Below are positions 16,917 to 56,078 of a DNA stretch of 64,000 nt, piece by piece; within the stretch, counting starts at the first letter, position 1; each line of letters begins with the position of its first letter. The stretch is from the IMG/VR virus record IMGVR_UViG_3300035661_000001, positions 310,001-374,000 of that record; one strand, written 5' to 3'. Both the position numbers and the translations under genes were made by a program. The notes under the pieces were generated by a model, which had not been told where the DNA came from, did not search any database, and saw only the letters and a list, made by a program, of their open reading frames with translations.

Positions 16917-16948
16917 GTATAACCTCTTATATAATTAAGAGGTTATAC
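16917..16948. repeat. 13-bp perfect inverted repeat with TATAAT loop (terminator and/or promoter hairpin)
   Basis: gtataacctctta-tataat-taagaggttatac between sheath and tube genes. Confidence 0.75.
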
Positions 16949-17000
16949 TTAAATTATGCATAAATAAGAATATCAATATCAAATAACTTTTGGAGTATAA

Positions 17001-17699
17001 ATGGCTACCGCACCTAATACCAATTCCACATTAACATTACCTAATGGTGTTAATAAAACCAGTACATCGTTGTCGACCAATATGATTATATTGGTTAATA
17101 ATACAGCTGTGGGCGCTATACAACAAATGGTAATTTCTGAAAAAAGACAGATAAAAATGATAGATGAAGTGGGAAATGATGGTCATATTGATTCTGTTCC
17201 CGTATCATCTACTAATATTACTGGTTCTTGTCAAAGAATTAGATTTGATAGATTAAGAATCACAGAAGCTTTTAGTAGAGGATTTTTACACGCCGCTTCA
17301 CAGGTTTACCCATTTGATATTGTTATTCTTGATAAACAAAAAAGAGATCAAGGCAGTCAAATTTCCACAGTAATTAAAAATGTTTGGATTTCTGGTTTAG
17401 ACTATACTTATGCCGCTAATGATTGGATCATTACTGATACTATGCAGTGGGAAGCAGAAACAATTTTCAGTATTTTAAATGGTGGTTCTTCACCAATTCC
17501 TGGTGGTATGCCTGCTGCTGTTGGTGGTGAAAGAGGAATTCAACACATGGGTGGTGGTCCAAATGGTGTTCTTAATATTGTTAGCGGTGACGGTATTGTT
17601 AATATCGAACAACTTACAGATACTGGTTCTAATGGCAGAAGAGGCTCGCTCGACGCTGCTGGATTGATAGATATTGGATCATCTGGTCTATTATTTTAA
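17001..17699 (+). CDS. tail tube protein
   Basis: Directly follows sheath; AVGAIQQMVISEKR...EVG...PFDIVI...IKNVWISGLDYTY pattern; Gly-rich C-terminal extension. Confidence 0.8.
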   Translation: MATAPNTNSTLTLPNGVNKTSTSLSTNMIILVNNTAVGAIQQMVISEKRQIKMIDEVGNDGHIDSVPVSSTNITGSCQRIRFDRLRITEAFSRGFLHAASQVYPFDIVILDKQKRDQGSQISTVIKNVWISGLDYTYAANDWIITDTMQWEAETIFSILNGGSSPIPGGMPAAVGGERGIQHMGGGPNGVLNIVSGDGIVNIEQLTDTGSNGRRGSLDAAGLIDIGSSGLLF

Positions 17700-17733
17700 T
17701 TAGTCTAATTATAACAGTTTGTGTAATTAACTA

Positions 17734-17774
17734 AAATTATCCTGTAATTGATATATTCAGTTACAGGATAATTT
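17734..17774. repeat. 14-bp inverted repeat enclosing TGATATAT (terminator and/or promoter hairpin)
   Basis: aaattatcctgtaa-ttgatatattcag-ttacaggataattt between the tube and chaperone genes. Confidence 0.7.
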
Positions 17775-17791
17775 AATTTTGTGGAGTATAA

Positions 17792-18478
17792 ATGCCTAGT
17801 TTTGACAGTCCCTTAGGAAGTAAGAAGCTCGCCGCGCAGTCTTTAAAAGAATTTGATATTCCAGATGAAAGTGGATTAACACAAGAACAAGTTGTTAATC
17901 CAGTTTTTAGAAGAAAAGCTGCGATGCCATCATTGGATGAAGCTGCTCTTCAAAATTTTCAACATAGAATAGATCATGAATTTGATCATAGTCCAGATCC
18001 TATAGAAATTGAAAGAGAATTTAAGGGTGCGAGAGAGGCGAAAAGGGCTAAAATTTCTGGTAGAGAAAGATTAAATGATGGCGCGAAAAAAAGATTAGAA
18101 ATGCTATTAGATATGACTCGTACTACTCACGAAGTTAATATCGACGGCACTATTTTTATTTTACAAACTTTGGCAGGCAAATCAATGAGAGAAGCTATTA
18201 TGGAAGCTTCAGAATTTGATGGAACTGTTCAGTCACCTTTTGAAGTTAGAAAACAATTTTTAGCTCGTTCTTTAATAAGTATTGGTGGAGCTACTTTTTC
18301 ACAATTTGTAGGTTCAGATAGTTTAGAAGTAAAATTGGCATTCATAGATGAGTTACATGAGCCTTTATTAAATAAACTTTATGACACATATTTGAAAATG
18401 ACAGAAATTGCTAAAGACAAATATTCAATAAAAAATGAAAATGATGCTAGGGAGATAATTGAAGACCTAAAAAAATAA
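17792..18478 (+). CDS. tail assembly chaperone (gpG equivalent)
   Basis: Lies between tube and tape measure; ends CTA AAA AAA TAA (slippery A7). Confidence 0.8.
   Translation: MPSFDSPLGSKKLAAQSLKEFDIPDESGLTQEQVVNPVFRRKAAMPSLDEAALQNFQHRIDHEFDHSPDPIEIEREFKGAREAKRAKISGRERLNDGAKKRLEMLLDMTRTTHEVNIDGTIFILQTLAGKSMREAIMEASEFDGTVQSPFEVRKQFLARSLISIGGATFSQFVGSDSLEVKLAFIDELHEPLLNKLYDTYLKMTEIAKDKYSIKNENDAREIIEDLKK
18469..18475 (+). other. -1 programmed ribosomal frameshift site (A AAA AAA)
   Basis: The -1 frame from 18475 reads IIYESDHRFAWFLCKEIYKTTPDDVRITD-MDPIQK..., open and in frame with the ORF at 18562-18828. Confidence 0.85.
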
Positions 18479-18828
18479 TATATGAATCGGATCATCGTTT
18501 TGCCTGGTTTTTATGTAAAGAGATTTACAAAACCACGCCAGACGATGTTAGAATAACGGATATGGATCCGATTCAAAAAATGTGGATGTACGAAAATTGG
18601 ATAGCTGATCAAAATGAACAGGCTGAATTAGCTAAAAATCACGCATATCTATTAGCATCATTCTCAAATCCTGAAGCTGTTAAGCAAATTTTGGGAGAAG
18701 GAAATACTCATACTTCTACTGATGAAGAATTTGAAGAATCAACAAGAATGATTAAAACAATTAATGATACGGTAGAGCGTCAAAAAGTTATTCCTAAGAA
18801 AAAACGTCGTCGTATAGCGCAAGGATAA
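18475..18828 (+). CDS. frameshift extension of tail assembly chaperone (gpT portion of gpGT)
   Basis: Open -1 frame reached from the slippery site; includes the listed 88-aa ORF at 18562. Confidence 0.8.
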   Translation: MIYESDHRFAWFLCKEIYKTTPDDVRITDMDPIQKMWMYENWIADQNEQAELAKNHAYLLASFSNPEAVKQILGEGNTHTSTDEEFEESTRMIKTINDTVERQKVIPKKKRRRIAQG

Positions 18829-18831
18829 TAA

Positions 18832-20937
18832 ATGGAAATCTCTTCAAATACTACTGATACACAGATTTTAGAACAATCTTATGAACGATCGTCAGCAGAA
18901 TTAGAAAAATATTCTAATTTAACATCTGCAGCAAAAGATCTTTCAGAAGGATTTTCAAATGTGTTACATGGTGTTAAAGATTCTTTAATATCAATAGGCG
19001 ATGCTTCTAAAAAAAGTACTGCTGAAATAGCTTTATATAATACAGCTATATTGGGAACAAGAAAAATGTTCGAAGGATTAAGTAATATTGATTCGAAAGG
19101 GTTAAATCTATTTCGTAATCAATATGAAGATTTAATTAATTTTATTAAAGAAAGTCCTATCGGTAGTGTTGCTGCAGAAAAAGCCAGATCTGCGATGGCG
19201 CTTTTATTGACACAATCAGGAGCATCAAAAGATATTGTTGCTAAAACAATATCAGCTCCAATAGAGATTTTATCTAAATTAGGAAAATCTTTTATAGATA
19301 GTGCTGATAATGGTTTAAAATTTACCAATGTAATGGTCCAATTAGCTGGTAAAAGTGGTGATTTGGGTAAAATATATGGGGCTGCCGGACCCAATCTTGA
19401 AAATTTTAATTTATTACTAAAACAACAAAGTTTACTTTTAAGTGATGTTGCTGAAGCAAATCATTTACCAATACAAACAATACATGAATATTATGCTCAA
19501 TTAGGCACTATACCTGGAGCTATGAATGCTGTTGTAAAAAGTAGTGAGGCGGCTTCTGATAGTTTTAATATGCTCACTGGAGCTGTTAAATTAGCTAGAG
19601 GATCTGGTAGAACAGTAGAAGAAATAACAGAAGATATGAGGATGGCTTTTAAGAATTATAATATGACAACGGGAGATGATTTTCTTCAATTTTCCGCAAG
19701 AATGACGGAATTAAATACCAAATTTGGAGCTAGTTTTGATGTTGTTAGAGATTCATTAAGAAGTATTTCTTCAGATTTTGTTATGTTTGGAAATAATGCT
19801 GAAAGCGCAACTAAAATATTAAATAATTATATTGGCGGGTTAAAAGCTACAGGGCTAAGTGGTGATGCCGCAACTCAAGTTGTAACTGGCATGGCTAAAG
19901 CTATATCAGGATTAAATTTGGCTCAAAGATCATTTTTATCTGTACAAAGTGGCATGAGCGGCGGATTAATGGGCGGATATAAAATTGAAGATATGATGAG
20001 AAAAGGTCAAACATCAGAAGTAATGGATTTGTATATTAAGCAAATCCAAAAATTATCTGGTGGTGGCAAAATGGTAACTGTTGAGGAAGCATCTAAAAGC
20101 CAAAAGGACGCAGCGATATTAACGAAACAAACACTGTTGTTACAGTCATTTGGTCTTGGTAAAGGTAGCGAGGGTGAAGCTCATAGAATAATAGAAGGTT
20201 TAAGACAAAAGCAAGACGGCAACGGAGTAGAAGAATTAAAAAAGAATATTACACAAGAATTAATGGGCAAAGGAACGCAATTACAACAAATGTCTGCGAC
20301 TGATTTTAGTCAATTAAGATCAGAATTAGAGGGAGTTAGAGTACTAGCGGATATTACTAATTTTGACACTATGAAAAGTATGTTAAGTGCACATGTGGGC
20401 AGACAGGGTGAAATTACAACTGCCGCTCAAGTATCTCATAGGCAATCATTAAAATCAGCTCAAGAATCTGCAGCTGTAAGTAGTGGGGCTAGAAAAAATT
20501 ATTTAGATAAACCATTATCAGGTGTAACTGGCGATGAAAATTTCATATCTGGTCAATTAACAAAAGCAAAAGATCATGTTATGGGAATTGATATTAAATC
20601 TTATACAGATAGTTTACCGTCATCACGTCCAAAACAATCTAATTTAAATCAAGAAAGATTTTTAAAATCTGATATTGATTATAGATTATCTATGGAAAAA
20701 ACAAATGTTGTAAAATCAGCTGCCGTTAGATCAGTTGATGTAAATTCATCTGCACGTAAGCAAGAAGCATTGAATACTAGAGGAGCAGGTGCTCATGGAG
20801 TAGTTAATATGGGTTCGGCAACACCTAAATTAGGGGAGTTAACTGTTAATATTACTGGTTATTGTATAAAGTGTAAAAGAGAAATTGAGGGTGGGCAACA
20901 AGCTGCTGCAGTTAATCCTGCAAGCATGGGAACATAA
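18832..20937 (+). CDS. tape measure protein
   Basis: 701 aa, helical and Ala/Ser/Gly/Leu-rich, directly after the G/GT chaperone; CxxC near the C-terminus. Confidence 0.75.
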   Translation: MEISSNTTDTQILEQSYERSSAELEKYSNLTSAAKDLSEGFSNVLHGVKDSLISIGDASKKSTAEIALYNTAILGTRKMFEGLSNIDSKGLNLFRNQYEDLINFIKESPIGSVAAEKARSAMALLLTQSGASKDIVAKTISAPIEILSKLGKSFIDSADNGLKFTNVMVQLAGKSGDLGKIYGAAGPNLENFNLLLKQQSLLLSDVAEANHLPIQTIHEYYAQLGTIPGAMNAVVKSSEAASDSFNMLTGAVKLARGSGRTVEEITEDMRMAFKNYNMTTGDDFLQFSARMTELNTKFGASFDVVRDSLRSISSDFVMFGNNAESATKILNNYIGGLKATGLSGDAATQVVTGMAKAISGLNLAQRSFLSVQSGMSGGLMGGYKIEDMMRKGQTSEVMDLYIKQIQKLSGGGKMVTVEEASKSQKDAAILTKQTLLLQSFGLGKGSEGEAHRIIEGLRQKQDGNGVEELKKNITQELMGKGTQLQQMSATDFSQLRSELEGVRVLADITNFDTMKSMLSAHVGRQGEITTAAQVSHRQSLKSAQESAAVSSGARKNYLDKPLSGVTGDENFISGQLTKAKDHVMGIDIKSYTDSLPSSRPKQSNLNQERFLKSDIDYRLSMEKTNVVKSAAVRSVDVNSSARKQEALNTRGAGAHGVVNMGSATPKLGELTVNITGYCIKCKREIEGGQQAAAVNPASMGT

Positions 20938-20946
20938 GGATTTATT

Positions 20947-21792: not shown

Positions 21793-21794
21793 AT

Positions 21795-33424: not shown

Positions 33425-36400
33425 ATGGTAACCGTTCGTAGTGCTAATGAAATTATACAAAGTTTAGTAGATTTTTTCAGACTTGCCCAGCCTGATTTAG
33501 ATACAAAGCCAGGTACAGTTGCTAGAGATTTGTTTATAGAAGGACCCTCTAGTCAAATATCTCTTTTGTATGACCAAATTGGAAGTATTTCTAATTTACA
33601 ATCCATTCGTTTAGTTGTAGGGTCTGATTTAGATAAATTATCTAAAAATTTTGGTATTGTTAGAAAACAAACGACCCCAGCAACTGGTACTGCTCTTTTA
33701 ACTTTTTCAGCGATTGTAGCACCGATCAATATCAATAAAGGAGATACGGTAATTGCGAATAATGGAATTTCTTATTCAGTAGCCGCCGGAGTAGCTGTAA
33801 TTCCATCTAATTCAAATTTTTATAAATCAGTTGCTAGTAAATTTAGAGACCAATTAGACACTGCGGGCATATCGGATCAATATGCTGTTCAAGTAACATT
33901 AATAGCTTCATCTGCGGGATCTGCTGGTAATATCGGAGCTTATTCTCTTTCTAGAACTACCATACCTGGCGTGTCTAATGTCACAAATGTTAATTCTTTT
34001 AATGGAGGAACTGATCAAGAGGATGATGCTTCATTCAGAAACCGTGTATTAGCGGCTTTTAGTGGATCTAGTGTGGGCACTGCGTTAGGATACCTTAACG
34101 TAGCTATGAGTACAACAGGAGTCTCTGACGCTTATGTTGTAGAGCCTGGTGACCCTCTTATGATTAGAGATGGCACGATAGTTAAAATAAATAGTGATGG
34201 ATCTAGAACTATTGTTTCTGAAGGTTCGGGTGGAAAAGTAGATATTATAGTTTTGGGTAGTAATTTAATTGAAAATAAAAACACTTTTATTTTCAATGAT
34301 AAAAGCAATACTAATGATCCTACTAGCCCTAAAAACGATGTAGTATTAGGTCAAATTATAGGCGATGAAAATAAAACTATCAATAGAAAAAGAATTGATG
34401 ATATCGCAAATGGAACTGTTCCGTCACAGCCAGTATCTGATATTTTAGAAGTGACTGGATCAGAGAGTGGATCAAATTTCTTACCTAAAACTGTTGATGA
34501 ATTTGGTAGAGTATCCGGTAATTATGAATTGATCAAAGATACTGGTGTATACGGTGGAAGTCCATGGGGATTTGATACTTTTCATATTATATCTAATAAA
34601 ATATCATTATTTAATGAAGATGTAATTAAGGGTCAATTTAACGGGCAAGATGCTGTTACGTTTACTGATGTATTAGAAGTGCCGCAGATACAACAGAATA
34701 TTTCAATTACTAATGAAAATAGTATCGTAACTAGTGATCGATCTATTATTCAATTATTACACACTCCTGCAACAAATGTTACGAGAGTATTTAATGTTCA
34801 TACAGGAGAAAGATATATTGTAGTTAATCAAAACTTTGATGTCACTGGTACTTTTAATTCTACTGGTAGAATAAAAATATCTGGAAACACTTTACCTTCC
34901 CCTAGTGATCAATTACAAGTTGATTATAGTTGGATTGTTAATTATGATCAATATTCTGATTATGATGGTTTAGTAAAAACATCTAATATTAGACCTGTTA
35001 CTGATAGCATTGATTGGGGATATGCATCTATTGTTAATAACGAAAAAATAATTTTCGTTAAAGATGTTTCTAATGGATTTTTTACGGGCACTGCTAATCA
35101 TCCTGTTAGTACAGTTTTATCAGCAAAATCTTTTTCTGAAATTACAGGAACAGTAGTTAAAGTTACTTCTGGAATTTTTGTAGATAGATTATCTATTACT
35201 ATTGGTAATTTACCAATTCAAACACAAACAGTTGATAGTATTACGTTTAAAAATAGCAATACTGAATTGTACAATACTCCGCAAGGAAACGGTATTTTTT
35301 CTAATGTCGCTACGATAGTAGGAATTAATGTAGTTTATAACACTGTTATTATATTACCAATAGATACGCCTGCTAAAAATGGAGACATAGTATCTACATT
35401 TATAAATAATATAGAAGTATTTAATGGAACAAATATAAATGGTAGTGCTACAGGAACACAAATTACTATTCCAGCAGAATTATTAACTACATCAGCGAAT
35501 AGTATTGTTTTGAAAGTTAATTATATTTCTAGTATTTCAGATTTATTTTCTGTTGGTACAACAGCATTACCTATCAGTAGAGTAAGTAATGGATTTTTAA
35601 CTAATGCAAGTAATGGTTTTAATAATTTTAGTATAGTTAATCTTTCTAGAAGAGAAAATCAAACTGTTCAAAAAAATACTAGCAATCAATTTTATGTAAA
35701 CTTAAATGCATTCGCAATTGATTTTTCAATATCTCCGTCGCAGGTTTTATCTATAATTAGACTTTCTGACAATTTAGAATTATGGAATTCTGATAATTTA
35801 GGTAGCATTATTGTGGGTAATACTGGTAATTATCAATTAATTTTGAACGGAGTAAATGCTCCTGCAGTAGGAGATAAAATTTTAGTTATCTATTATGTGG
35901 GAGATTTGAGAAAATTTCAACCATTTAGTTTTGCAAACCAAAATATTTCAAATAGAATAGAAATATTACAAACGGATGCTAGTACCGGGAAATTATATAT
36001 TCCTATAAGTGGATTGACAAATCAAACGAACGTACAGTTCTCCATTATAGAACCAAATACTGATATTGTAATATTTTCTGGAACAGATGGAGTTTTAATT
36101 TCAAATTCTTTATCTGCAACATTGAATAGCGTTGCAGTTGATTTCAGTTCTTCAATTGATTTAACAAACAAAAAAATTAAGATTGTTGGAAGTATCAACA
36201 ATGGTACATACGATATTTCATCATATGATGTTAATACAAATACATTAACATTTATCAATAACATTAACAAATTAACAAACGACCAAATATGTGTTATTAG
36301 AATAGCAGACGGCAAAGAAATATGGAATTACAATGGAATAATAGATATTGCTAATAATAAATTATTATTTGCAAACAATAATTTTACTCATGTTAACGAT

Positions 36401-44649: not shown

Positions 44650-47600
44650 ATGACAAAAAGAAGCCCTATTTCTGCTCAACAAAATATATGGTTTGATGCT
44701 CAACAAGTAGATAATACTGACTTGACATTGGAACAAGATTTTAACAATACTATAAATTCTGCAGTAATTGGTAATCATATAGGTTCAGGAACCTTGCCTG
44801 AAGTACTAGAACAGATTGTTCTATTTGACTCTTCTCTAGCCTCTGGTTTTTTGGATGGCACAATTGTACAAATCCAAAATCAACCTTCAGATAATAATTT
44901 AGGTAATCAATTAGAAATAGAATTAACCGGTTCTAATGTCGCAGGAAAAAAAGCAATTAAATTTTGCGTAATTGGGTTAGACTTTCAAAGTAATTTAATT
45001 TATGAAACTTTCTATTTCAGAACAAATGAAATACAAGTTACTCGTCAACATTTTGCTCAAATTTTATTATTGTTATTCAATGATTTTATTGGAGATTCTA
45101 CTCTTTCTCTTAATTTGGTAGGCAAATTAATAGTTAGAGAGGCTAGACCTTTAACTATTTCTAGAGATCCAATTATGGTCTCTCAGGCGGTAGAGCCTAA
45201 TTTATTTTTCAGAGATTTTTATGTTGCTGGATTTAGTTCATTATTAAGTTTATTACAAACAGCTTTACCATTATACAATATCGATACTCTTAATATTTAT
45301 ACTGCTCCACTAGATAATAAAATTTTAGGAGTTGGAGACGTTACTACTCAAATTGGACAAAAATTTGTTACAAAAACTAGTAATATTCAAAAGGTCACAT
45401 TATTATTATCAGTACAAAATACAGAAGTAGGTAATGAAGATGATTTAGCCTGGAATGGTGATATCGTTGTTAGTTTGTATCCATTACAATCAACTATAGA
45501 ATGTATTTCTGATATCGCTCCTAATTCTCCTATAGACTTTTCTCCTTCAAACATACCTTTAGCGCAATTAAGTTTTAATTACAACACTTTACAAGCTTCA
45601 GGAACAGTTTTAGATACGGTCCCTCAACCAGTTGATTTTATTTTTAGCAATGGTTCAGTTGCTAATGGAAACCAATTAGTTATTGGTAATTATTATACAG
45701 TTACTATTAAGAGATCGGGCTCAGCTGATAAATGTGATATTTTAATAGCAGCAGGTTCAAATCATACTTTCAATTCAAGAATAACTACATTCACCGGAAC
45801 GTTGTGGATAGATATTCCTGAACAAGATTTGTGGTTTAAAATATGGACAGATGCCGCAAAAGTTTCAGATGGTCAAGTATACGAAAATGGTTATGGAAGC
45901 ATTCTTCCAAAAATCATCGAAGATTCTGACACGCTTGCCACAGTTGATTATTCATTTGGTAATATTCAATTTAAAGGTAACGATATATACAGGGCGGTTG
46001 TCGCAGCAATCACGGAAGAAACTACACCAATTCCTGATCAAAGAACTGGTAATCCAGTTCTTTCTAGACAACAATTTATTCCAAAAATAAATTTATTAAA
46101 TACGATTGACTTAACGAATTTAGAAAAAGCTTCTGATCCATTAATTATTGGTGCTATCTCTGATAAAAATATCAAGTTTTTTGATTCATTATCAGCAGTA
46201 ATTAATTCAAAATTGTATAGCGCCACTATAGTACACGATGAATTAATTGTTAAAATAGTAGATGATTCTACTGATACTGTTAGATTTGATAGCTCTGTCT
46301 CTGGTTTGATCTCTAGTCTTTTGAATGGAGATTTTGTTGGAGCTAAAATTTTTCCAAATGCTGGCGCTATTAATATCTATTATAGAATAGCTTCCTCAAA
46401 ATTAATATCTTGTATACTTGGAGATGTAAATGGAGATGGAATTATAGATGAAAAGGATTTGGAATTATTAAATAGTTATATTGATTATGATTTAAATGTT
46501 GGCTTACCAGTTGATACTGTAGTTGTTACTGATGGTACTACCACCACATTTACCAATAGTTATAATACATATACAAACAATTTTAGTAATTTATTCGGAA
46601 TCACTTTTCAAGTTGTAAATTCAATTACTAATGCGGTAATTGCTTCAGGTACTGATGGCGTATTGGTCGCTCATCCCACAAATAATAGATTAGCTCAATT
46701 TACAAGTTCTAGTATAATATTTGGAGATATTGTTGGATTAGGAAGTCATAAATTAGTATTGATAACACCTAGTAATCAAGAAAATTACGGTGGGTTTGAT
46801 ATCGTATCAATTGATACGTTGACAGATGTATTGACTATTAGAAAAGTGATTTTAACAGGCGATGTAATTATGCAAATGTTAAGATCTGATATTGATGGTG
46901 ATTTTCATGTTACTAATAATGATGGATATTTGTTATCAAATTATATTGAAAAAGCAGTATTATCATCATCTCTTACTAGCACATATCCTGGACCAACAAC
47001 TAATCCATTTACCAAAATCGGAACCAAATTTAATACTATCAGATTTAAATTAGAACAATTTACAGATCGAGCAGATGATTATGCGACAGATCCAAATGAT
47101 AGAGTAAATGTAGTACATCCTTCTCCTGATATCTTTCTGTCGGATGGATATTTTGAAAATCATGATTTTTATACAAGTCCATCTGTTTTATCTTTCCAAA
47201 AACAACTGACATGGGATGAATCTTTAATTGTAACTAATAGTCGCCCACGATTTGTGCCATGTGTGTTCCCAACTCTTTCGGGATTCATGGAAAATAAATG
47301 TTCTATTGAAGGAGTAAATGTTAATATTTACGAATCTAAACCGGATTTTGATTCGGGTAGAGTAGATGTATTTGTTCCTGATAATTTGATTATTGGCAGA
47401 GGTGGGGAAATACATAGACCAGATGGTAATTTTTATAAAGTAGATTTTGAAGTTGGTACTATTGTATTAGAGATTCCTGACGGAATATTTGGAGCAGAAC
47501 GTACCATAAATGTTTTAGATGATTTTATTGCAGATTATACCGGAGATGGTAGAACTCGTTTAGGATTCCCTTCAATGAAATTTGCTGACTGTTCACTAGT

Positions 47601-48189
47601 TAATGCTGACGCTTTAATTAACGATCAAGTGAGATTCTCAGTTGCAGTTCAATCTTTTTCACCTAACACAAATGGACTGAGCACTGATGGTTATGAAGGT
47701 GCTATAGTAGATGGTAAAATTGGAGTAGCAATAGATTATCAGACCGGATTATTAACACTGAATTTTACCAATTTGTATCAAGATACAATTTTACAAACAT
47801 TAAGTACTAAAATTCAAGTAAGCATTTTCTTGAAAAAAGGCGGGTTTAATAACCAACCACTGTTTGTAGATTCAGTAAAAATGCAAAATATGTTAAAACT
47901 AGTTAGCGTATTTAGTGGAGCTGTAGACGGAGGACCATCTGCATTAGTAGATTTACAATCAGACATTACTGGAATACTACCAATTATACATGGTGGTACA
48001 GGATTGAATGATGTTGGTGCTTTCGGAACCGTATTGATTAGTAACGGTAGCGGACTAAGTTATCAATTCATAGTCAGTGATTCTATAGTCTATATTCCTG
48101 CTAATATTACTGATTGGTCTGGTGTTGCACCGGCATCGGTGCAAGAGGCTCTAGACAGAATTGCAGCGGCGATAGGTCCGATCCCATAA
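44650..48189 (+). CDS. baseplate/fibre-attachment structural protein with dockerin/EF-hand-like motifs
   Basis: N-terminal WFDAQQV...DLTLEQ; GDVNGDGIIDEKD and SDIDGDFHVTNND Ca-binding motifs; C-terminal LPIIHGGTG and SVQEALDRI fibre motifs. Confidence 0.6.
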   Translation: MTKRSPISAQQNIWFDAQQVDNTDLTLEQDFNNTINSAVIGNHIGSGTLPEVLEQIVLFDSSLASGFLDGTIVQIQNQPSDNNLGNQLEIELTGSNVAGKKAIKFCVIGLDFQSNLIYETFYFRTNEIQVTRQHFAQILLLLFNDFIGDSTLSLNLVGKLIVREARPLTISRDPIMVSQAVEPNLFFRDFYVAGFSSLLSLLQTALPLYNIDTLNIYTAPLDNKILGVGDVTTQIGQKFVTKTSNIQKVTLLLSVQNTEVGNEDDLAWNGDIVVSLYPLQSTIECISDIAPNSPIDFSPSNIPLAQLSFNYNTLQASGTVLDTVPQPVDFIFSNGSVANGNQLVIGNYYTVTIKRSGSADKCDILIAAGSNHTFNSRITTFTGTLWIDIPEQDLWFKIWTDAAKVSDGQVYENGYGSILPKIIEDSDTLATVDYSFGNIQFKGNDIYRAVVAAITEETTPIPDQRTGNPVLSRQQFIPKINLLNTIDLTNLEKASDPLIIGAISDKNIKFFDSLSAVINSKLYSATIVHDELIVKIVDDSTDTVRFDSSVSGLISSLLNGDFVGAKIFPNAGAINIYYRIASSKLISCILGDVNGDGIIDEKDLELLNSYIDYDLNVGLPVDTVVVTDGTTTTFTNSYNTYTNNFSNLFGITFQVVNSITNAVIASGTDGVLVAHPTNNRLAQFTSSSIIFGDIVGLGSHKLVLITPSNQENYGGFDIVSIDTLTDVLTIRKVILTGDVIMQMLRSDIDGDFHVTNNDGYLLSNYIEKAVLSSSLTSTYPGPTTNPFTKIGTKFNTIRFKLEQFTDRADDYATDPNDRVNVVHPSPDIFLSDGYFENHDFYTSPSVLSFQKQLTWDESLIVTNSRPRFVPCVFPTLSGFMENKCSIEGVNVNIYESKPDFDSGRVDVFVPDNLIIGRGGEIHRPDGNFYKVDFEVGTIVLEIPDGIFGAERTINVLDDFIADYTGDGRTRLGFPSMKFADCSLVNADALINDQVRFSVAVQSFSPNTNGLSTDGYEGAIVDGKIGVAIDYQTGLLTLNFTNLYQDTILQTLSTKIQVSIFLKKGGFNNQPLFVDSVKMQNMLKLVSVFSGAVDGGPSALVDLQSDITGILPIIHGGTGLNDVGAFGTVLISNGSGLSYQFIVSDSIVYIPANITDWSGVAPASVQEALDRIAAAIGPIP

Positions 48190-48213: not shown

Positions 48214-48258
48214 TAACCCTTGACATATAGTTTTTTAAACTTACCTTGTCAAGGGTTA
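48214..48258. repeat. 12-bp inverted repeat at the end of the structural operon; overlaps a sigma70-like promoter
   Basis: taacccttgaca...tgtcaagggtta; TTGACA (48220-48225)-N16-TACCTT on the plus strand. Confidence 0.65.
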
Positions 48259-48534: not shown

Positions 48535-48573
48535 GAAAAAATCATTCCTGGTAATATTTGATCATATCTTAAT

Positions 48574-49317
48574 ATGGACAATTTAAAATGTATTAAGTGT
48601 GAAATAGAAAAAGAGCAAACTGAAGATAATTTTTATTATCGAAAAGACACTAATAAATGGAAGCCAGTTTGCAAAACTTGTTTGAGTGATAAAAACAAAA
48701 AAATATATGCAAACAATTCTGAAGATATAAAAACCAGATGTAATGTATATAGAGATAAAAATCGGAAAGTAATCAATACTAAAGCAAAAATTTACAATTC
48801 AAAACCCGATGTAAAATTAAGAAATAAAACTTATAGACAAGATAATAAAGTGGCTTTAAGAAAAAAAGAAAAAGCGTGGCGCCTCAAAAATCCAGAAAAA
48901 CACAAAGAAATTGCAAGAAAAAAATCTCAGAAACAAAACAAAAAGCCAATGTCAAAAATAAAACATCACATTTCTTGGTGTGTCAGTAAGGCTCTGATAA
49001 AGCAAAATACTTCAAAAGCAAACAAGTCAATAATTAATTATTTAGGTTATTCAATTCAAGAATTGAAAGAACATCTTGAAAAACAATTTGAATCATGGAT
49101 GACTTGGGATAATTATGGTGTTTATAAATTATCTTCTTGGAAAGATGATGATAAGTCTACATGGACTTGGCAAATAGATCACGTCATACCTCATTCGACG
49201 TTTAAGTATATTTCTATGAAAGATGGAGAATTTAAGAAGTGTTGGGCATTAGAAAACTTGAGACCATATTCCGCCAAACAGAATGTTTTGGATGGTGCAA
49301 ATAAAACGAGACATTAA
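48574..49317 (+). CDS. HNH-family homing endonuclease (copy 2)
   Basis: CxxC...CxxC, HLEKQFESWMTW...WQIDHVIP...CWALENLRPYSAKQN. Confidence 0.85.
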   Translation: MDNLKCIKCEIEKEQTEDNFYYRKDTNKWKPVCKTCLSDKNKKIYANNSEDIKTRCNVYRDKNRKVINTKAKIYNSKPDVKLRNKTYRQDNKVALRKKEKAWRLKNPEKHKEIARKKSQKQNKKPMSKIKHHISWCVSKALIKQNTSKANKSIINYLGYSIQELKEHLEKQFESWMTWDNYGVYKLSSWKDDDKSTWTWQIDHVIPHSTFKYISMKDGEFKKCWALENLRPYSAKQNVLDGANKTRH

Positions 49318-50442: not shown

Positions 50443-50458
50443 ATAATATTAAGGGTGC

Positions 50459-50487
50459 TTGACACCACTCGGGCTCGTACCTATAAT
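50459..50487 (+). promoter_or_regulatory. perfect-consensus sigma70 promoter
   Basis: TTGACA (50459-50464)-17 nt-TATAAT (50482-50487). Confidence 0.85.
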
Positions 50488-50497
50488 TGATAGACTA

Positions 50498-51442: not shown

Positions 51443-51507
51443 GAAAGAATATTAAACTATGCCTAAGATTACCGAAGTAAAATTTATTTTTAATTGTGAG
51501 GTGTACA

Positions 51508-52374
51508 GTGCCGGAAGGGGTTGAGGTGCGAATAAGCAGTGAATTAATTAAACCATTAGTGCAAAGCAAATATATAAGCAAAATTCGTTTTGATGATGAT
51601 AGTAGATATGGTGGACCATATAAATCATCACCTGAAGGTTATGAAAAATTCGTGTCAACTTTTAGGAAATTGGAAAATATTGGATATGTCGTTGAGCCTT
51701 TAAAAATAATAGATGTAAAATGTAAAGGTAAATTCATGTACTGGCAATTTGATAATGGCTGGTATATGTACTGCACATTTGGTATGACAGGGCAATGGTC
51801 TCCAACAGCAGGCAAACATGTTTGTTTACATATGAAATTATACGACGATGAAGATAATTTTAGTAATGTGTATTTTAATGATCCTCGACATTTTGGAACA
51901 ATCAAATTTATAGAAACTGAGGCTGAATTAAAAGCCAAATTAAATGAATTAGGTTGGGACCCTTTATCTGGTTCTGTAGATAAATGGGTGCCTTGGTTAA
52001 AATCAGAATTAACAAAATCTAAAAAACCCATTGGTCAAGTATTATTAGACCAAGCAATATTTGCTGGTGTTGGTAATTATATTAGAGCAGAAGCTCTTTA
52101 TGCATCCCAGATCTCCCCGTGGAGAATCTCTAATACTCTCTCAGGGCAGGATACAGAGGTTTTGTGTAAAGCTATCGTCGATGTTATGGAAGAGTCTTAT
52201 AAATGGCAAGGAGCTACCTTGCTGACTTACAAAGACGCTTATGGTAATGAAGGGAAATACGCTTCTTGTTTTAAAGTGTATGGTAAAAAAATCGATCCTT
52301 TTGGTAATCTGATAAAATCAGAGCCAACACCAGATGGCAGAACTATTCATTGGTGCCCTACAATTCAAAAATAA
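51508..52374 (+). CDS. Fpg/Nei family DNA glycosylase/AP lyase, zincless-finger type
   Basis: GTG at 51508 after GAGGTG gives M-P-E-G (catalytic Pro2/Glu3); KGKFM, FGMTG, FNDPRHFG, H2TH LLDQAIFAGVGNYIRAE; C-terminal GRTIHWCPTIQK without a 4-Cys finger. Confidence 0.92.
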   Translation: MPEGVEVRISSELIKPLVQSKYISKIRFDDDSRYGGPYKSSPEGYEKFVSTFRKLENIGYVVEPLKIIDVKCKGKFMYWQFDNGWYMYCTFGMTGQWSPTAGKHVCLHMKLYDDEDNFSNVYFNDPRHFGTIKFIETEAELKAKLNELGWDPLSGSVDKWVPWLKSELTKSKKPIGQVLLDQAIFAGVGNYIRAEALYASQISPWRISNTLSGQDTEVLCKAIVDVMEESYKWQGATLLTYKDAYGNEGKYASCFKVYGKKIDPFGNLIKSEPTPDGRTIHWCPTIQK

Positions 52375-52450
52375 TTTATAAATTGTTTTGTTTTTTAAAT
52401 TCTGTAACGTGTAGATATAGAGGTAGCAAATCTTTTTATAAGAGAAAAAT

Positions 52451-53443
52451 ATGTCGTTATTAAATAAGATATTGATATTTTTAGGCGTTGCGGTTGTAAT
52501 CTTTGGATTAGGCTTTATTATATACAAGCAAAACGAAATTTCTAACCGTCAGTTAGCAATTGAAGCTCAAATGGTTGGTCAAAAAGAATTGGCTGACAAT
52601 ATTATGAGGTCCCAAAACGGATATGCCACTAAAGATGATATTGAAAAGTTTATTAAAAACAATAATGTAAATTTACAAGCTATTCAAGATGATTTAGACA
52701 AGCTACATGCTAGTTTAATTGCTGCCAATACTATTACTGTCAATAGCCGTGAACAAACGATTACTAATCTACCTAGTAGTGGAACTGGTAGTGTTAATGT
52801 ATCTCCAGTTACGACAGATGTATATGGATATTTGAAAAAAACCCAGCTATTAAATATACATGAAGATTTTAATGGAACCTCAGTACCAATTGGGCAAATT
52901 GGTTTTAGTGCTTGGCAACCTAAGCCTTGGGATATAAAAATTTCTCCCAGAGAATACAAAGTTACAAATATTATAGGAACAGACGATAATCAGCGCGTCT
53001 ATGTTTATAATAAATTCAGCGTTAAAGTTGAAGGTAAAGATTATGATGTAAAAATATCTGCAGCGGAAACTAAACAAGAATTTCCAGAAGCCAAGTGGAG
53101 CTGGTGGAACCCTCGTTTATTTGTTGGTGTAGATGGCGGTGTGAATATTGGTACTACAGCACTGCCAACTAATGGCAGTCGTGTAAAAGGAGAATTTACT
53201 CCCAATCTTAGTCTTGGTATAATGAGCTATGGTAAATTCAAGAATCAACCAGATTTCTCGGTATTACAAATAGGTGTTGGTGTAGGAACAGTCTCCCAAA
53301 AACCACAACTTATAGTCACTCCGGTAGCGTATAATATTGGTAAACATATTCCATTTGTAAATAATACTTATCTAGCACCCTCATTAGCAGTAGGGGTAGA
53401 TGGTTCTGTTTCCCTTATGGGCGGTGTAAGAGTAGGATTATAA
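52451..53443 (+). CDS. N-terminally membrane-anchored protein with coiled coil and C-terminal amphipathic beta-strands
   Basis: Hydrophobic residues 7-25, heptad region, alternating strands ending SLMGGVRVGL. Confidence 0.55.
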   Translation: MSLLNKILIFLGVAVVIFGLGFIIYKQNEISNRQLAIEAQMVGQKELADNIMRSQNGYATKDDIEKFIKNNNVNLQAIQDDLDKLHASLIAANTITVNSREQTITNLPSSGTGSVNVSPVTTDVYGYLKKTQLLNIHEDFNGTSVPIGQIGFSAWQPKPWDIKISPREYKVTNIIGTDDNQRVYVYNKFSVKVEGKDYDVKISAAETKQEFPEAKWSWWNPRLFVGVDGGVNIGTTALPTNGSRVKGEFTPNLSLGIMSYGKFKNQPDFSVLQIGVGVGTVSQKPQLIVTPVAYNIGKHIPFVNNTYLAPSLAVGVDGSVSLMGGVRVGL

Positions 53444-54396
53444 TGAGTAAAAAGAAAGTTTTAATTACAGGTTCGTGTGGTTTTGTAATTGGCAATTTAA
53501 TTAGAAAAGCTATTTATGAAAAACAGCCATATCAATTTGTTAGTGTAGATAAAGTAAGCGTAAATGCTTTAAATTCTATGTACTGGAATAAAAATCATAC
53601 TTTTCATATTGCTGACATAAGAGATCAACATGTAATTGATGTTATTTTTCAATTTGAAAAGCCGGATATTGTTATTCATGGTGCGGCGGCAACTTCTTTT
53701 GATGAAGACCCTAATAGCTTAGTAAGCTCCAATGTATTAGGCACACAAGTTATGATTAATGCGTGTATAAAACATAAAGTGGATAAATTAATTTACATTA
53801 GTACTGATGAGGTGTACGGTCAATTATCTAATGAATCAGATGATTCTTGGACCGAAGATTCTCCAATGAATCCTAGAAATTTTTATGCGGCTACAAAAGC
53901 GTCTGGAGAACTATTGATAAGGGCAGCTCATCAGTCACATGGATTAAAATACAATATTACTCGTAGCTCAAATAATTATGGTCCTCGTCAAACTCCAGAC
54001 AAACTGGTGCCAAAAATAATTAAATGCGTATTACAAGATAGTAAAATTCCGGTATATGGTCAAGGCTTACAAATTAGAGATTGGACCCACGTTTTTGATA
54101 ATTGTGGGGCTATATTGACTATTTTAAATAAAGGTGAAGATAATCAAATATATAATATCTCTTCAAATCAGGAGTTTACAAATATTGAAGTCGTACAACA
54201 CGTTTGTAATGTTTTAAGTAAAGGTCATAATTTGATTGAACATATTGTTGATCCACGCGGAAATGGACATGATTTCAGATACGGTGTAAATTCTACTAAA
54301 ATTCGTTCACTAGGCTGGGAGCCAAAATTTAAATTCAAAGATGGTATAGTAAGTACCACAGAATGGTTCCAGGTAAACCAGTGGTTTATTAAATAA
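53443..54396 (+). CDS. dTDP-glucose 4,6-dehydratase-like NAD-dependent epimerase/dehydratase (RmlB-like)
   Basis: VLITGSCGFVIG, STDEVYG, YAATK, SNNYGPRQ, YGQGLQIRDW, GHDFRY. Confidence 0.88.
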   Translation: MSKKKVLITGSCGFVIGNLIRKAIYEKQPYQFVSVDKVSVNALNSMYWNKNHTFHIADIRDQHVIDVIFQFEKPDIVIHGAAATSFDEDPNSLVSSNVLGTQVMINACIKHKVDKLIYISTDEVYGQLSNESDDSWTEDSPMNPRNFYAATKASGELLIRAAHQSHGLKYNITRSSNNYGPRQTPDKLVPKIIKCVLQDSKIPVYGQGLQIRDWTHVFDNCGAILTILNKGEDNQIYNISSNQEFTNIEVVQHVCNVLSKGHNLIEHIVDPRGNGHDFRYGVNSTKIRSLGWEPKFKFKDGIVSTTEWFQVNQWFIK

Positions 54397-54408
54397 AGAA
54401 CAATAAAT

Positions 54409-54663
54409 ATGTCATTAAAAATTACTCTTGAACTGCTAAAATTAGCACATGATCATATAGAGATCAAGACTGGTCCTTACAGTAAAGGTAAGCACGCTTT
54501 AACGTTAGAAAAAAATGAATTAATGTTAGTAATCAATACTGGACATGAATTCAAAAATTTCTTATTAGATGAGGCGGACTTATTAAAAAATCCATACGAT
54601 TTGATTATGGAAATTAAAAGGATAGTCGAAAAACCCTCCATTAACCTAAGTGAGTTAAATTAA
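54409..54663 (+). CDS. hypothetical protein
   Basis: 84-aa ORF tightly packed between neighbouring genes. Confidence 0.55.
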   Translation: MSLKITLELLKLAHDHIEIKTGPYSKGKHALTLEKNELMLVINTGHEFKNFLLDEADLLKNPYDLIMEIKRIVEKPSINLSELN

Positions 54664-54664
54664 T

Positions 54665-56020
54665 ATGCCAGTAGTGCATTCTATACAACACGATAACCCA
54701 GAAGAATTGGTTGACGATATGACAAACGAAAACGAAGAGAAAGAACAGCAAGATAAATTAGCCGCCCTAAAAGCGAAAAGCCAGGCAAAACAACAAGAAA
54801 AAGAAGGTAAGATGGCTTCAAAAATAGTAGCGAAGAAAGAAAGAAGTTTGAATTTAGGTATTCTTGGTTCAGGTCAAGCCGGATCAAGAATCGCAGAATC
54901 TTTCTATAAACTTGGATACGATTCAGTTGTAGTTAATACTGCTATGCAAGATCTTAAGTTTATTGACATTCCAGATTCTAATAAATTACTGCTTGAATAT
55001 GGTTTAGGTGGAGCTGCAAAAGAAATAGAGATTGGTCGGGCGGCGGCAGAAGCACACCGTGGCTCCATATTAGATCTTGTTAATGACAAATTAGCAAATT
55101 CGCAGGTCAATTTACTATGTCTTAGTTTAGGCGGCGGATCCGGAGCAGGATCATGTGAAACATTAGTAGATCTACTATCTGAATTAGGCAAGCCATTAGT
55201 TGTTATTACTGTGCTTCCAATGGATACGGAAGATTCTCAAACCAAAAGCAATGCCCTAGAGACTTTATCAAAATTAGCTAAATTAACACAATCTAAAAAG
55301 GTTAACAATTTGATTGTAGTAGACAATGCAAAGATAGAAGCAATTTTGCATGATGTTAGTCAGGTAGATTTTTATGGTACGGCGAATAAAGCTATTGTTG
55401 ATCCAATAGATGTTTTCAACACCTTATCTTCAATGGCTTCTTCTACTAAAGCATTAGATCCAATGGAATGGTCAAAACTTTTCATTGACGGAGAAGGTAT
55501 AAGCGTCTATGGCGAATTCTCTGTAGATAATTATCAAGAAGATACTGCTATCGCAGAAGCTGTTATTAACAATTTGTCCGGCAATCTTCTTGCTGAAGGT
55601 TTTGATCTTAAGCAATCAAAATATGTAGGATTCATTATTGCTGCAAATAAGACGGTTTGGTCTAAAATCCCAGCATCAAGCGTCAATTATGCAAGTAGCA
55701 TGATTAACGATCTTTGTGGAAATCCAAAAGGCGTGTTCAAGGGAATGTATATTGTTGATTCTCTTGAAGATACCGTAAAAGTATTCTCTATGTTTTCTGG
55801 TCTTGGACTTCCCGCAGGAAGAATTGAACAGTTAAAAAGCGAAACTAAAGAGCTACAATCAAAAGCTAAGAATAAAGATGATTCTAGAAATTTGACTTTA
55901 CAGCTTGATACTGGAACTAGTGAGACTGTGTCAGCGGCTCAAAAAATCAAAGAGAAGATTGCTCAGAAATCTTCAGCTTTTGGCAAATTAATGGGCGGAG
56001 TTGTTGATCGTCGTAAATAA
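54665..56020 (+). CDS. tubulin/FtsZ-family GTPase (PhuZ/TubZ-like)
   Basis: GSGQAGSRIA, VVVNT, GLGGAAKE, tubulin signature LGGGSGAG, VLP, VVDN; the start could be 54665 or an internal ATG. Confidence 0.88.
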   Translation: MPVVHSIQHDNPEELVDDMTNENEEKEQQDKLAALKAKSQAKQQEKEGKMASKIVAKKERSLNLGILGSGQAGSRIAESFYKLGYDSVVVNTAMQDLKFIDIPDSNKLLLEYGLGGAAKEIEIGRAAAEAHRGSILDLVNDKLANSQVNLLCLSLGGGSGAGSCETLVDLLSELGKPLVVITVLPMDTEDSQTKSNALETLSKLAKLTQSKKVNNLIVVDNAKIEAILHDVSQVDFYGTANKAIVDPIDVFNTLSSMASSTKALDPMEWSKLFIDGEGISVYGEFSVDNYQEDTAIAEAVINNLSGNLLAEGFDLKQSKYVGFIIAANKTVWSKIPASSVNYASSMINDLCGNPKGVFKGMYIVDSLEDTVKVFSMFSGLGLPAGRIEQLKSETKELQSKAKNKDDSRNLTLQLDTGTSETVSAAQKIKEKIAQKSSAFGKLMGGVVDRRK

Positions 56021-56039
56021 AACTGTAATTTAAATGAAA

Positions 56040-56078
56040 ATCTCGGTCTTCTGATATATTTTGTCAGAAGACCGAGAT
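56040..56078. repeat. 15-bp inverted repeat with TGATATAT at the stem/loop junction (terminator and/or promoter hairpin)
   Basis: atctcggtcttctga-tatattttg-tcagaagaccgagat, followed by a T-run. Confidence 0.75.

What the first reader, a model, noticed from the sequence alone, without database searches (positions are those of the whole stretch)
16917..56078. Long intergenic inverted repeats with promoter-like motifs in the loop or stem
Seen: four 12-15 bp perfect stems, at 16917 (loop TATAAT), 17734 (loop contains TGATATAT), 48214 (stem contains TTGACA) and 56040 (TGATATAT at the stem/loop junction). Each lies between co-directional genes. Inference: terminators with nested promoters, or cruciform/hairpin promoters; N4 virion RNAP is the precedent for hairpin promoters. 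This would couple termination and re-initiation, for example to set sheath:tube:chaperone stoichiometry.
Basis: partly seen in the sequence, partly recalled or inferred. Interest (0 to 1): 0.6.

Follow-up and report, generated by a model that had tools for sequence, protein, structure and literature searches.

The report
Promoters built into phage RNA hairpins
In a 452-kb uncultivated phage, several gene-boundary hairpins carry a promoter at their tip, so that incoming transcripts probably fold and stop while new transcripts start inside the second arm and escape; the design is already known from T4-like phages, here in a new lineage and form.

Summary
All four hairpins are real: perfect stems of 13, 14, 12 and 15 bp, each between + strand genes. 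Shuffled intergenic sequence gives 0.02 such stems in the window.

The motifs are mostly not chance.
- TGWTATAT (W = A or T) is the most enriched word upstream of genes, tRNA T-loop words aside. It often lies exactly 8 nt before an ATG that has no Shine-Dalgarno, so it looks like an extended -10 promoter that can give leaderless mRNAs.
- Site 2 (tube to tail chaperone): 23 distinct orthologues keep a strongly covarying hairpin with this motif at the tip and a T-rich tail. Other relatives have an ordinary terminator followed by the free-standing motif.
- Site 4 (tubulin to helicase): relatives keep the motif inside unrelated hairpins that touch or cover the start codon.
- Site 3: TTGACA, 16 nt, TACCTT, conserved in four relatives' genomes.
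- Site 1: lineage-specific and unresolved.

G.U pairs far outnumber A.C, so the hairpin acts as sense RNA, not as an N4-type DNA hairpin.

Best reading: hairpin-embedded promoters whose transcripts start in the 3' arm and escape the hairpin. The closest known cases are the T4-type PeSL cassettes and the T4 gene e / I-TevI hairpins. No RNA data could be obtained.

The parts
16917..16948 (+). Hairpin 1: 13-bp perfect stem, loop TATAAT (16930-16935). The tip reads TCTTATAT, one mismatch from TGTTATAT. It lies in a roughly 75-nt insertion between sheath and tube that most relatives lack.
   Evidence: dG -19.9, z -7.1. No T tract; not flagged by the terminator scan.
17734..17774 (+). Hairpin 2: 14-bp perfect stem, 18 pairs as RNA with a 5-nt loop. 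It lies between the tube gene and the tail-assembly chaperone gene.
   Evidence: Conserved with covariation in 23 distinct orthologues.
17749..17756 (+). TGATATAT promoter-like element (extended -10 type) at the tip of hairpin 2. The predicted start at about 17764-17765 lies in the 3' arm.
17775..17786 (+). T-rich tail after hairpin 2, followed by GGAG and the ATG at 17792.
   Evidence: Orthologues average 67% T here, against 35% before Shine-Dalgarno sites genome-wide.
48214..48258 (+). Hairpin 3: 12-bp perfect stem, 21-nt loop, 25 nt after the stop of the 1179-aa tail gene.
   Evidence: dG -20.7, z -5.2.
48220..48247 (+). Sigma-70-type promoter: TTGACA (48220-48225, in the 5' arm), 16-nt spacer, TACCTT (48242-48247, at the loop/3' arm junction). 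The predicted start at about 48254 lies in the 3' arm.
   Evidence: TTGACA plus a TAnnnT element 16-17 nt downstream is kept after the orthologous stop codon in G001, G003, G004 and G005. It is one of 10 such intergenic promoters in the genome, 7 of them with 16-nt spacers.
56040..56078 (+). Hairpin 4: 15-bp perfect stem, 17 pairs as RNA with a 5-nt loop, between the tubulin-like gene and the UvsW-like helicase. The tail is ATTTTT, then the ATG at 56085.
   Evidence: dG -28.7, z -7.7.
56052..56059 (+). TGATATAT promoter-like element at the stem/loop junction of hairpin 4. The predicted start at about 56067-56068 lies in the 3' arm.
   Evidence: Orthologues keep GATATAT or GTTATAT inside unrelated hairpins.
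58094..58137 (+). Hairpin 5, not in the finding: 15-bp perfect stem. The 14-nt loop holds TGATATAT and the ATG of an HNH-like ORF.
   Evidence: Probably a different case, at the junction of a homing-endonuclease insertion.
14137..16908 (+). Tail sheath gene (upstream of site 1).
17001..17699 (+). Putative tail tube gene, flanked by sites 1 and 2. Assigned by position only.
   Evidence: Position between sheath and chaperone; 54 relatives. No family hit.
17792..18828 (+). Tail-assembly chaperone with a -1 frameshift: 0 frame 17792-18478, slippery A_AAA_AAA at 18469-18475, -1 frame open to 18828. This is the gene served by the site 2 promoter.
   Evidence: A tape-measure-like gene follows.
44650..48189 (+). 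1179-aa tail gene, last of the long structural block; site 3 follows it.
54665..56020 (+). Tubulin/TubZ/PhuZ-like gene (upstream of site 4).
56085..57542 (+). UvsW-like helicase gene (downstream of site 4).

Best explanation
These are hairpin-embedded promoters.

Each inverted repeat acts as an RNA hairpin on transcripts that arrive from the upstream gene. At site 2, and probably at the window's site 4, the hairpin plus its U-rich tail terminates or attenuates those transcripts. At site 4-type loci the hairpin also, or instead, masks the start region of the next gene.

A promoter sits inside the same repeat. At sites 2 and 4 it is the -10-only element TGWTATAT at the tip. At site 3 it is TTGACA in the 5' arm with TACCTT at the 3' edge of the loop. 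Transcription from it starts about 8-9 nt downstream, inside the 3' arm. The new transcripts therefore lack the 5' arm, cannot fold and are neither stopped nor masked. The downstream gene is thus uncoupled from the upstream one and gets its own expression level.

The polymerase is presumably the host enzyme with the host sigma or the phage-encoded one.

Shown: the hairpins, their excess over chance, covariation, the sense-strand G.U bias, the T-rich tail, motif enrichment and spacing, and the alternative tandem layout in relatives.

Inferred: the transcription start points, termination, masking, and which sigma factor is used.
For: (1) Hairpin excess: 4 against 0.02 in the window and 25 against 0.19 in the genome.

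(2) TGTTATAT and TGATATAT are the top non-tRNA words in upstream regions, enriched 13-14 fold. Of 55 copies, 34 lie in the roughly 12% of the genome that is intergenic.

(3) Seven copies lie exactly 8 nt before an ATG with no Shine-Dalgarno, and 4 more lie at 7-11 nt. No -35 element is conserved. The related genome G003 shows the same enrichment and a 7-9 nt peak, 12 cases.

(4) At site 2, 23 distinct orthologues at 57-91% tube protein identity keep the hairpin. 86.8% of cells are paired, against 37-50% when the partners are slid. 11 of 17 pairs change on both sides, and 0 of 500 shuffles reach this. The motif is near-invariant at the tip.

(5) G.U/U.G 32 against A.C/C.A 5. The sense RNA hairpin is more stable than the antisense one in 18 of 23, by a mean of 4 kcal/mol, p = 2e-4.

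(6) The tail after the stem is 67% T, against 35% before Shine-Dalgarno sites elsewhere. The terminator scan flags sites 2 and 4.

(7) Twelve relatives in the tree (thirteen loci) instead have a GC-rich terminator plus T run followed by the free-standing motif. The tube-protein tree needs at least 6 switches between the two layouts, of which at least 2 are forced by well-supported branches.

(8) The predicted start lies in the 3' arm in 23 of 23 site 2 orthologues and 5 of 8 site 4 orthologues, and at the loop edge in the other three. In L059 and L062 it coincides with an ATG that lies in the 3' arm.

(9) The site 3 promoter is conserved in four other genomes. A second TTGACA-type promoter enclosed by an inverted repeat lies at G000 376019.

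(10) In G000 the motif sits inside stems of at least 8 bp 6 times out of 34, against 0.95 expected.

(11) Experimental precedent exists for both halves of the mechanism (PMC2839356, PMC3014915).
Against: - There are no transcript data.
- TGWTATAT lacks a conserved T at the position equivalent to -7 of a sigma-70 promoter, so its reader is unknown.
- Most motif copies (28 of 34) are not in hairpins, and most hairpins carry no motif. The nested form is a minority layout.
- Site 1 has no orthologues, no TG and no T tract.
- Site 3 has a 21-nt loop and a weak tail, and only one relative (G001) has a short repeat around its promoter.
- Site 4 orthologues mostly lack a T tract, so 'terminator' does not hold uniformly.
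- The stems are AT-rich and long compared with textbook terminators.
- The orthologues are related, so the covariation counts are not independent events.
Confidence: 0.62

Rival explanations
1. These are plain terminators or 3'-end stabilising hairpins. The promoter-like words in the loops do nothing there and are just AT-rich loop sequence.
For: Sites 2 and 4 pass the terminator scan. Loops are naturally AT-rich. TATAAT and TTGACA words are common in this genome.
Against: The loop word is near-invariant in 23 orthologues while the stems change. It is the genome's top upstream word and has a fixed 8-nt spacing to leaderless ATGs. Relatives with ordinary terminators keep the motif free-standing just downstream. 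In L010 and L026 the hairpin stays next to the downstream gene even though other sequence has been inserted after the tube gene.
Confidence: 0.12
2. The structure acts at the DNA level. The inverted repeat extrudes as a cruciform under supercoiling and presents the -10 element single-stranded to a polymerase (N4-like), or it hides the element and works as a supercoil-sensitive switch.
For: The repeats are perfect, long and AT-centred, and the -10 element lies at the tip. Precedent: N4 early promoters (PMC4496689).
Against: G.U outnumbers A.C 32 to 5, and the sense strand folds better than the antisense. A cruciform would not favour one strand. A conserved T-rich tail makes sense only for RNA. 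At site 3 the -10 lies at the loop edge, not at the tip. The motif works without any hairpin at most loci. No T7-like polymerase was detected (though that search had no positive control). The large proteins of the window show no polymerase domains.
Confidence: 0.08
3. The tip, a near-palindrome of the form TTGATATATCAA, is an operator for a dimeric phage regulator that overlaps a promoter. The hairpin is a by-product.
For: The conserved core at site 2 is nearly palindromic.
Against: The outer 10-15 bp of each arm differ completely between loci and lineages yet stay complementary. That indicates selection on pairing rather than on a binding sequence. Free-standing motif copies are not palindromic.
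Confidence: 0.05
4. The loop motif is read in RNA, as a processing or binding site (for example for an endoribonuclease or a translational regulator) presented on a hairpin.
For: The structure is an RNA structure, and the motif is presented at its tip.
Against: Copies lying 8 nt before leaderless ATGs and directly after terminators fit a DNA promoter. In RNA, half of the motif is paired.
Confidence: 0.05
5. These are mobile promoter/stem-loop cassettes or their remnants (PeSL-like recombination modules or miniature repeats), not locally selected regulators.
For: Site 1 is an insertion that relatives lack. Site 3 sits at a junction where the downstream genes differ between relatives. Site 5 flanks a homing-endonuclease insertion.
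Against: The stems are unique, and no other copy of any of them exists in the genome. Sites 2 and 4 are orthologous and stable across the family.
Confidence: 0.05

Closest known systems
PeSL cassettes (promoter-early stem-loop) of T4-type phages: Arbiol et al. 2010, PMC2839356; Comeau et al. 2014, PMC4122927
   Same: Both are intergenic composites of a sigma-70-like promoter and a stem-loop. In PeSLs the stem-loop most often lies between -35 and -10 or overlaps the -10 box, and a Shine-Dalgarno and ATG follow. Terminator and promoter activities of PeSLs were shown with lacZ reporters. The proposed role is the same: insulating neighbouring genes.
   Different: PeSLs are multi-copy elements of about 100 bp with conserved sequence (stems of the G-run, loop, C-run type). 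They cluster in hyperplastic regions and mediate recombination and mini-circle formation. Here every stem is unique. The main promoter is a -10-only TGWTATAT at the hairpin tip. The elements sit at orthologous core-gene junctions and are kept by covariation across a family of 350-450-kb phages.
T4 genes e, soc, 49 and I-TevI: a late promoter inside an inhibitory hairpin (review: Uzan and Miller 2010, PMC3014915)
   Same: Read-through transcripts form a hairpin. Transcripts from a promoter placed within the region that encodes the 5' strand lack that strand and escape. At site 4-type loci the start codon lies in or next to the 3' arm.
   Different: In T4 the hairpin sequesters the Shine-Dalgarno or AUG, and the promoter is the gp55-dependent TATAAATA. 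At site 2 the Shine-Dalgarno and AUG lie outside the hairpin and a U-rich tail follows, which points to termination rather than masking.
Rho-independent (intrinsic) terminators followed by a promoter (ordinary tandem layout)
   Same: Relatives L012, L027, L030, L032-34, L037, L045, L052-54 and L057, and G000 257621, have exactly this: a GC-rich hairpin, a T run, then the motif.
   Different: In the window the two elements are merged into a single hairpin, which is longer, more AT-rich and carries the -10 at its tip.
N4 virion RNA polymerase hairpin promoters (PMC4496689)
   Same: An inverted repeat is centred about 10 nt upstream of the start.
   Different: N4 promoters have a 5-7 bp stem, a 3-nt loop and a GC-rich heptamer. 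They act as template-strand DNA hairpins that need gyrase and SSB, and they are read by a giant T7-like polymerase. None of these features is seen here.

Membership tests
PeSL composite promoter/stem-loop cassette | Intergenic sigma-70-like promoter combined with a stem-loop that overlaps or adjoins it, followed by the downstream gene's start | tested here: met
   Sites 2, 3 and 4: the promoter element lies inside the hairpin and the ATG 4-18 nt after the stem.
PeSL composite promoter/stem-loop cassette | Many copies of a conserved cassette of about 100 bp, with shared stem sequence, able to recombine with each other | tested here: not met
   Each stem is unique. A self-search of the genome finds only the site itself, and no direct-repeat family links the sites.
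PeSL composite promoter/stem-loop cassette | Demonstrated terminator and promoter activity | not testable with these tools
   This needs reporter assays or transcript-end mapping.
T4 e / I-TevI type promoter-in-hairpin translational control | The promoter is placed so that its transcripts lack the 5' strand of the hairpin | tested here: met
   By prediction only: positions +8/+9 after the motif fall in the 3' arm in 23 of 23 site 2 orthologues and 5 of 8 site 4 orthologues, and at the loop edge in the other three.
T4 e / I-TevI type promoter-in-hairpin translational control | The Shine-Dalgarno and/or AUG is sequestered in the helix | tested here: inconclusive
   Met in site 4 orthologues L059 and L062, where the ATG lies in the 3' arm, and nearly met in G001 and G003, where the ATG lies 2 nt after the stem. 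Window site 4: only a weak GAG lies in the arm, with the ATG 6 nt after it. Site 2: not met, since GGAG and the ATG lie outside.
Intrinsic (Rho-independent) terminator | Stable stem-loop immediately followed by a U-rich tract | tested here: inconclusive
   Sites 2 and 4 pass the scan, and the T-rich tail is conserved at site 2. Sites 1 and 3 fail it: no T tract, and a 21-nt loop at site 3. Most site 4 orthologues have no T tract.
Extended -10 promoter (TGnTATAAT) | TG one base upstream of a TATAAT-like hexamer; no -35 element needed | tested here: met
   TG, then A or T, then TATAT is invariant by definition of the word. No information at -35 in 31 aligned copies.
Extended -10 promoter (TGnTATAAT) | Conserved T at the last hexamer position (-7), and a start 6-8 nt downstream | tested here: inconclusive
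   The base after TATAT is not conserved. The spacing is consistent: the ATG of leaderless genes lies 8 nt after the word.
N4-type DNA hairpin promoter | 5-7 bp stem, 3-nt loop and GC-rich core, read as a DNA hairpin | tested here: not met
   The stems are 12-19 bp and the loops AT-rich with at least 5 nt. The strand-asymmetric G.U bias shows an RNA structure.
N4-type DNA hairpin promoter | Phage-encoded giant T7-like virion RNA polymerase | tested here: inconclusive
   PF00940 has no match in the genome, but that search had no positive control. The window's largest proteins show no polymerase domain. A sigma factor is encoded instead.

The most novel reading that the evidence does not exclude
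The nested layout is not just compaction but a coupling device. A polymerase that releases its RNA at the hairpin's U tract stays on the DNA only 10-20 bp from the embedded promoter and re-initiates there. This is one-dimensional recycling, as seen in single-molecule work (PMC6978380, PMC6978322). Downstream expression would then be a fixed fraction of upstream flux. A related version is that transient extrusion of the AT-centred repeat pre-melts the -10 element for a sigma factor. Either would make this a natural terminator-to-promoter hand-off element, kept by selection across a family of very large phages.
Probability: 0.1. Interest if true: 0.7.

Novelty: new variant of a known kind. Interest (0 to 1): 0.4.

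Why it matters
- It gives a first working picture of transcription signals in an uncultivated lineage of 350-450-kb phages. These are a -10-only promoter word (TGWTATAT) that often yields leaderless mRNAs, a separate class of the form TTGACA, 16 nt, TAnnnT, and hairpins that insulate neighbouring genes.
- The merging of promoter and hairpin, described experimentally only in T4-like phages, recurs independently in a distant lineage. There it is maintained by compensatory evolution at orthologous core-gene junctions, and it has swapped with the ordinary tandem layout several times.
- The elements are short (40-60 bp) and have many natural variants. They are therefore convenient test objects for how termination, re-initiation and translational masking can share one sequence, and for annotating promoters in metagenomic phage genomes.

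Tried and rejected
I did not try to reach the same data another way.
- Rfam: no family matches anywhere in the window.
- Generic sigma-70 scan: promoter-like hits are no more frequent than in shuffles (36 against 32.6; 66 against 70.4). The scan alone therefore says nothing. Comparative conservation was needed.
- A conserved -35 partner for TGWTATAT: none. The word GGTAAAAT occurs upstream of a few copies only.
- TTGACA at site 3 as part of a minus-strand promoter: its -10 would be TATATG and it would point antisense into the tail gene, so I rejected it.
- Site 3 orthologues through the downstream gene 48574-49317: that gene is scattered among unrelated phages and is not syntenic. I used the upstream tail gene instead.
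- Phage RNA polymerase: PF00562 has no match. PF00940 has no match, but without a working control.
- Cultured relatives: none. The best sheath matches are 25-29% identical over a third of the protein.
- Site 5 as a nested promoter: the ATG overlaps the motif, so it cannot be the -10 for that ORF. I treat it separately.
- The MAFFT alignment of site 2 misplaces a few rows, so the pair counts are conservative. I did not build a covariance model.


Full report
**Context.** The window is bases 310001-374000 of a 451,956-bp IMG/VR virus record with direct terminal repeats. The genome has 36.5% GC and reads well in the standard code: about 88% is coding and about 675 genes were called.

The window holds a long + strand structural block followed by a replication block.
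- Structural block: sheath 14137-16908; a putative tube gene 17001-17699, assigned by position; a chaperone; a tape-measure-like gene; a baseplate wedge; and very large tail proteins.
- Replication block: a tubulin/TubZ-like gene 54665-56020 and a UvsW-like helicase 56085-57542.

There are no cultured relatives. There are many uncultivated ones of 350-450 kb.

As RNA, sites 2 and 4 extend to 18 and 17 pairs with 5-nt loops.

Perfect stems of at least 12 bp occur 4 times in the window's 2.5 kb of intergenic DNA, against 0.02 in 500 dinucleotide shuffles. Genome-wide the figures are 25 against 0.19. Folding z-scores are -5.2 to -8.1.

**The loop word is the phage's main promoter-like signal.**
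- A de novo count of 8-mers in 356 upstream regions puts TGTTATAT and TGATATAT on top, enriched 13-14 fold. Only tRNA T-loop words come close.
- Of 55 copies of TGWTATAT, 34 are intergenic.
- Seven lie exactly 8 nt before an ATG with no Shine-Dalgarno in between, and four more lie at 7-11 nt. Others lie 14-52 nt upstream with a Shine-Dalgarno in between.
- No -35 element is conserved.

This is what an extended -10 promoter that often gives leaderless mRNAs would look like. The related complete genome G003 (tube protein 84% identical) reproduces both the enrichment (12-13 fold) and the 7-9 nt peak, with 12 cases. The phage encodes a sigma factor with regions 2 and 4 just outside the window. No polymerase subunit was found.

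**Site 2 (tube to chaperone).** Fifty-four relatives of the tube gene were fetched. In the lineages with the nested layout, 23 distinct sequences at 57-91% protein identity, a hairpin of 11-19 bp precedes the chaperone gene. Its arms differ from lineage to lineage but stay complementary, and its tip keeps TTGATATAT or a close variant.

On an alignment that was not fitted to the structure:
- 86.8% of cells are paired, against 37-50% when the partners are slid by 1-3 columns;
- 11 of 17 pairs show changes on both sides;
- 0 of 500 shuffles reach the observed values.

G.U pairs outnumber A.C 32 to 5. The sense RNA hairpin is more stable than the antisense one in 18 of 23 cases, p = 2e-4. The selected structure is therefore a sense-strand RNA and not a DNA cruciform.

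The 14 nt between the stem and the Shine-Dalgarno are 67% T, against 35% elsewhere. Only 2.8% of genes reach that level.

Twelve relatives in the tree (thirteen loci) instead have a GC-rich terminator with a T run, followed by the free-standing motif and then the same ribosome site. The tube-protein tree needs at least six switches between the nested and tandem layouts, at least two of them forced by well-supported branches. In L010 and L026, extra sequence separates the tube gene from the chaperone, and the nested hairpin stays with the chaperone.

The downstream gene is a tail-assembly chaperone with a -1 frameshift.

**Site 4 (tubulin to helicase).** In eight lineages the helicase is preceded by a hairpin with GATATAT or GTTATAT in the loop and entirely unrelated stems.

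Here the 3' arm ends 2-7 nt before the ATG, or contains it (L059, L062). Most orthologues have no T tract; the window has ATTTTT. In L059 and L062 the predicted start coincides with the ATG. This resembles the T4 gene e / I-TevI arrangement, in which read-through transcripts are masked and promoter-proximal transcripts are free (PMC3014915).

**Site 3.** TTGACA right after the stop of the 1179-aa tail gene is kept in G001, G003, G004 and G005, with a TAnnnT element 16-17 nt downstream. The rest of the spacer is hardly alignable.

In the window the -35 element is in the 5' arm. TACCTT sits at the junction of the loop and the 3' arm, and the predicted start lies in the 3' arm. The genome has ten such oriented intergenic promoters, seven with 16-nt spacers. 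A second one, at G000 376019, is also enclosed by an inverted repeat.

**Site 1.** The hairpin lies in a roughly 75-nt insertion that only the window and a near-identical contig possess. In most relatives the sheath stop runs straight into the tube's ribosome site, and a few have a free TGATATAT there.

The tip reads TCTTATATAAT. That is a perfect TATAAT but without TG, with only a poor TTGATC 15 nt upstream, and no T tract follows. Its function stays open.

**Common geometry.** Across sites the shared rule is that the predicted start lies beyond the 5' arm: 23 of 23 at site 2, and 8 of 8 at site 4 if the loop edge is counted. That fits an RNA-level mechanism in which own transcripts escape the hairpin. 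It does not require the -10 to be single-stranded, and at site 3 the -10 is not at the tip.

In G000 the motif lies inside stems of at least 8 bp six times out of 34, against 0.95 expected, P = 3e-4. Most promoters and most hairpins are nevertheless separate.

**Comparison with known systems.**
- The T4-type PeSL cassettes combine a sigma-70-like promoter with a stem-loop that lies between -35 and -10 or overlaps -10. Both their activities were shown with reporters (PMC2839356, PMC4122927).
- T4 e, soc, 49 and I-TevI place a late promoter inside an inhibitory hairpin (PMC3014915).
- The present elements work like these. They are not PeSL members, because their stems are unique and not repeated.
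- N4 hairpin promoters differ in every tested feature (PMC4496689).

**Limits.** No transcript data could be obtained. Start points, termination and masking are inferences. The sigma factor that reads TGWTATAT is unknown.

Noticed in passing
window 18469-18828: A slippery A_AAA_AAA lies just before the stop (18476-18478) of ORF 17792-18478. The -1 frame stays open to 18828 and is conserved as protein in relatives. This is a tail-assembly-chaperone type -1 frameshift. A conserved long-range stem, with arms about 80 nt apart and a compensatory change between the window and its relatives, starts 8 nt after the slippery run. The apparent 100-nt gap is therefore coding.
   Followed up: partly
window 57969-59491: A fifth 15-bp hairpin (58094-58137) holds TGATATAT and the ATG of an HNH-like ORF (58117-58869). 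That ORF sits between a duplicated 5' fragment (57969-58145) and a full copy (58901-59491) of a gene that is uninterrupted in relatives. This looks like a homing-endonuclease insertion. Several other motif-associated leaderless ORFs in the genome also start with CxxC zinc-finger-like N-termini.
   Followed up: partly
window 50459-50487: A perfect sigma-70 consensus (TTGACA, 17 nt, TATAAT) lies in an intergenic gap, so a canonical promoter class exists beside TGWTATAT.
   Followed up: partly
G000 376476-377129 (L101:1315-1968), about 2.5 kb beyond the window end: A phage-encoded sigma factor of 217 aa with regions 2 and 4 (phrog_351, E = 2.7e-14), next to a ribonucleotide reductase small subunit gene.
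   Followed up: partly
window 29045 and G000 120004, 129509, 150709, 186208, 208835, 209942, 257661: These genes have TGWTATAT 8 nt (10 nt at window 29045) before the ATG and no Shine-Dalgarno. They are likely leaderless mRNAs. The same pattern appears in the related genome G003.
   Followed up: yes
window 13971-14136: Upstream of the sheath gene there is an imperfect hairpin. Its right arm carries TGATATAT on the minus strand (14010) and its left arm a near-copy on the plus strand. The orientation is unproductive for the minus-strand copy, and this remains unexplained.
   Followed up: no
whole genome G000, coding regions: Perfect hairpins are also in excess inside genes: stems of at least 12 bp number 26, against 1.45 in shuffles. 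Examples in the window are at 34268 and 49876. The cause is unknown.
   Followed up: no
G003 (L113-L135), upstream regions: The words TTCCCATC and ATAACGGA are enriched 14-17 fold upstream of genes in the related genome. This may be a second regulatory motif or a repeated element.
   Followed up: no
window 54665-56020: A tubulin/TubZ/PhuZ-like gene in a 452-kb phage. I did not look for a nucleus-shell protein.
   Followed up: no
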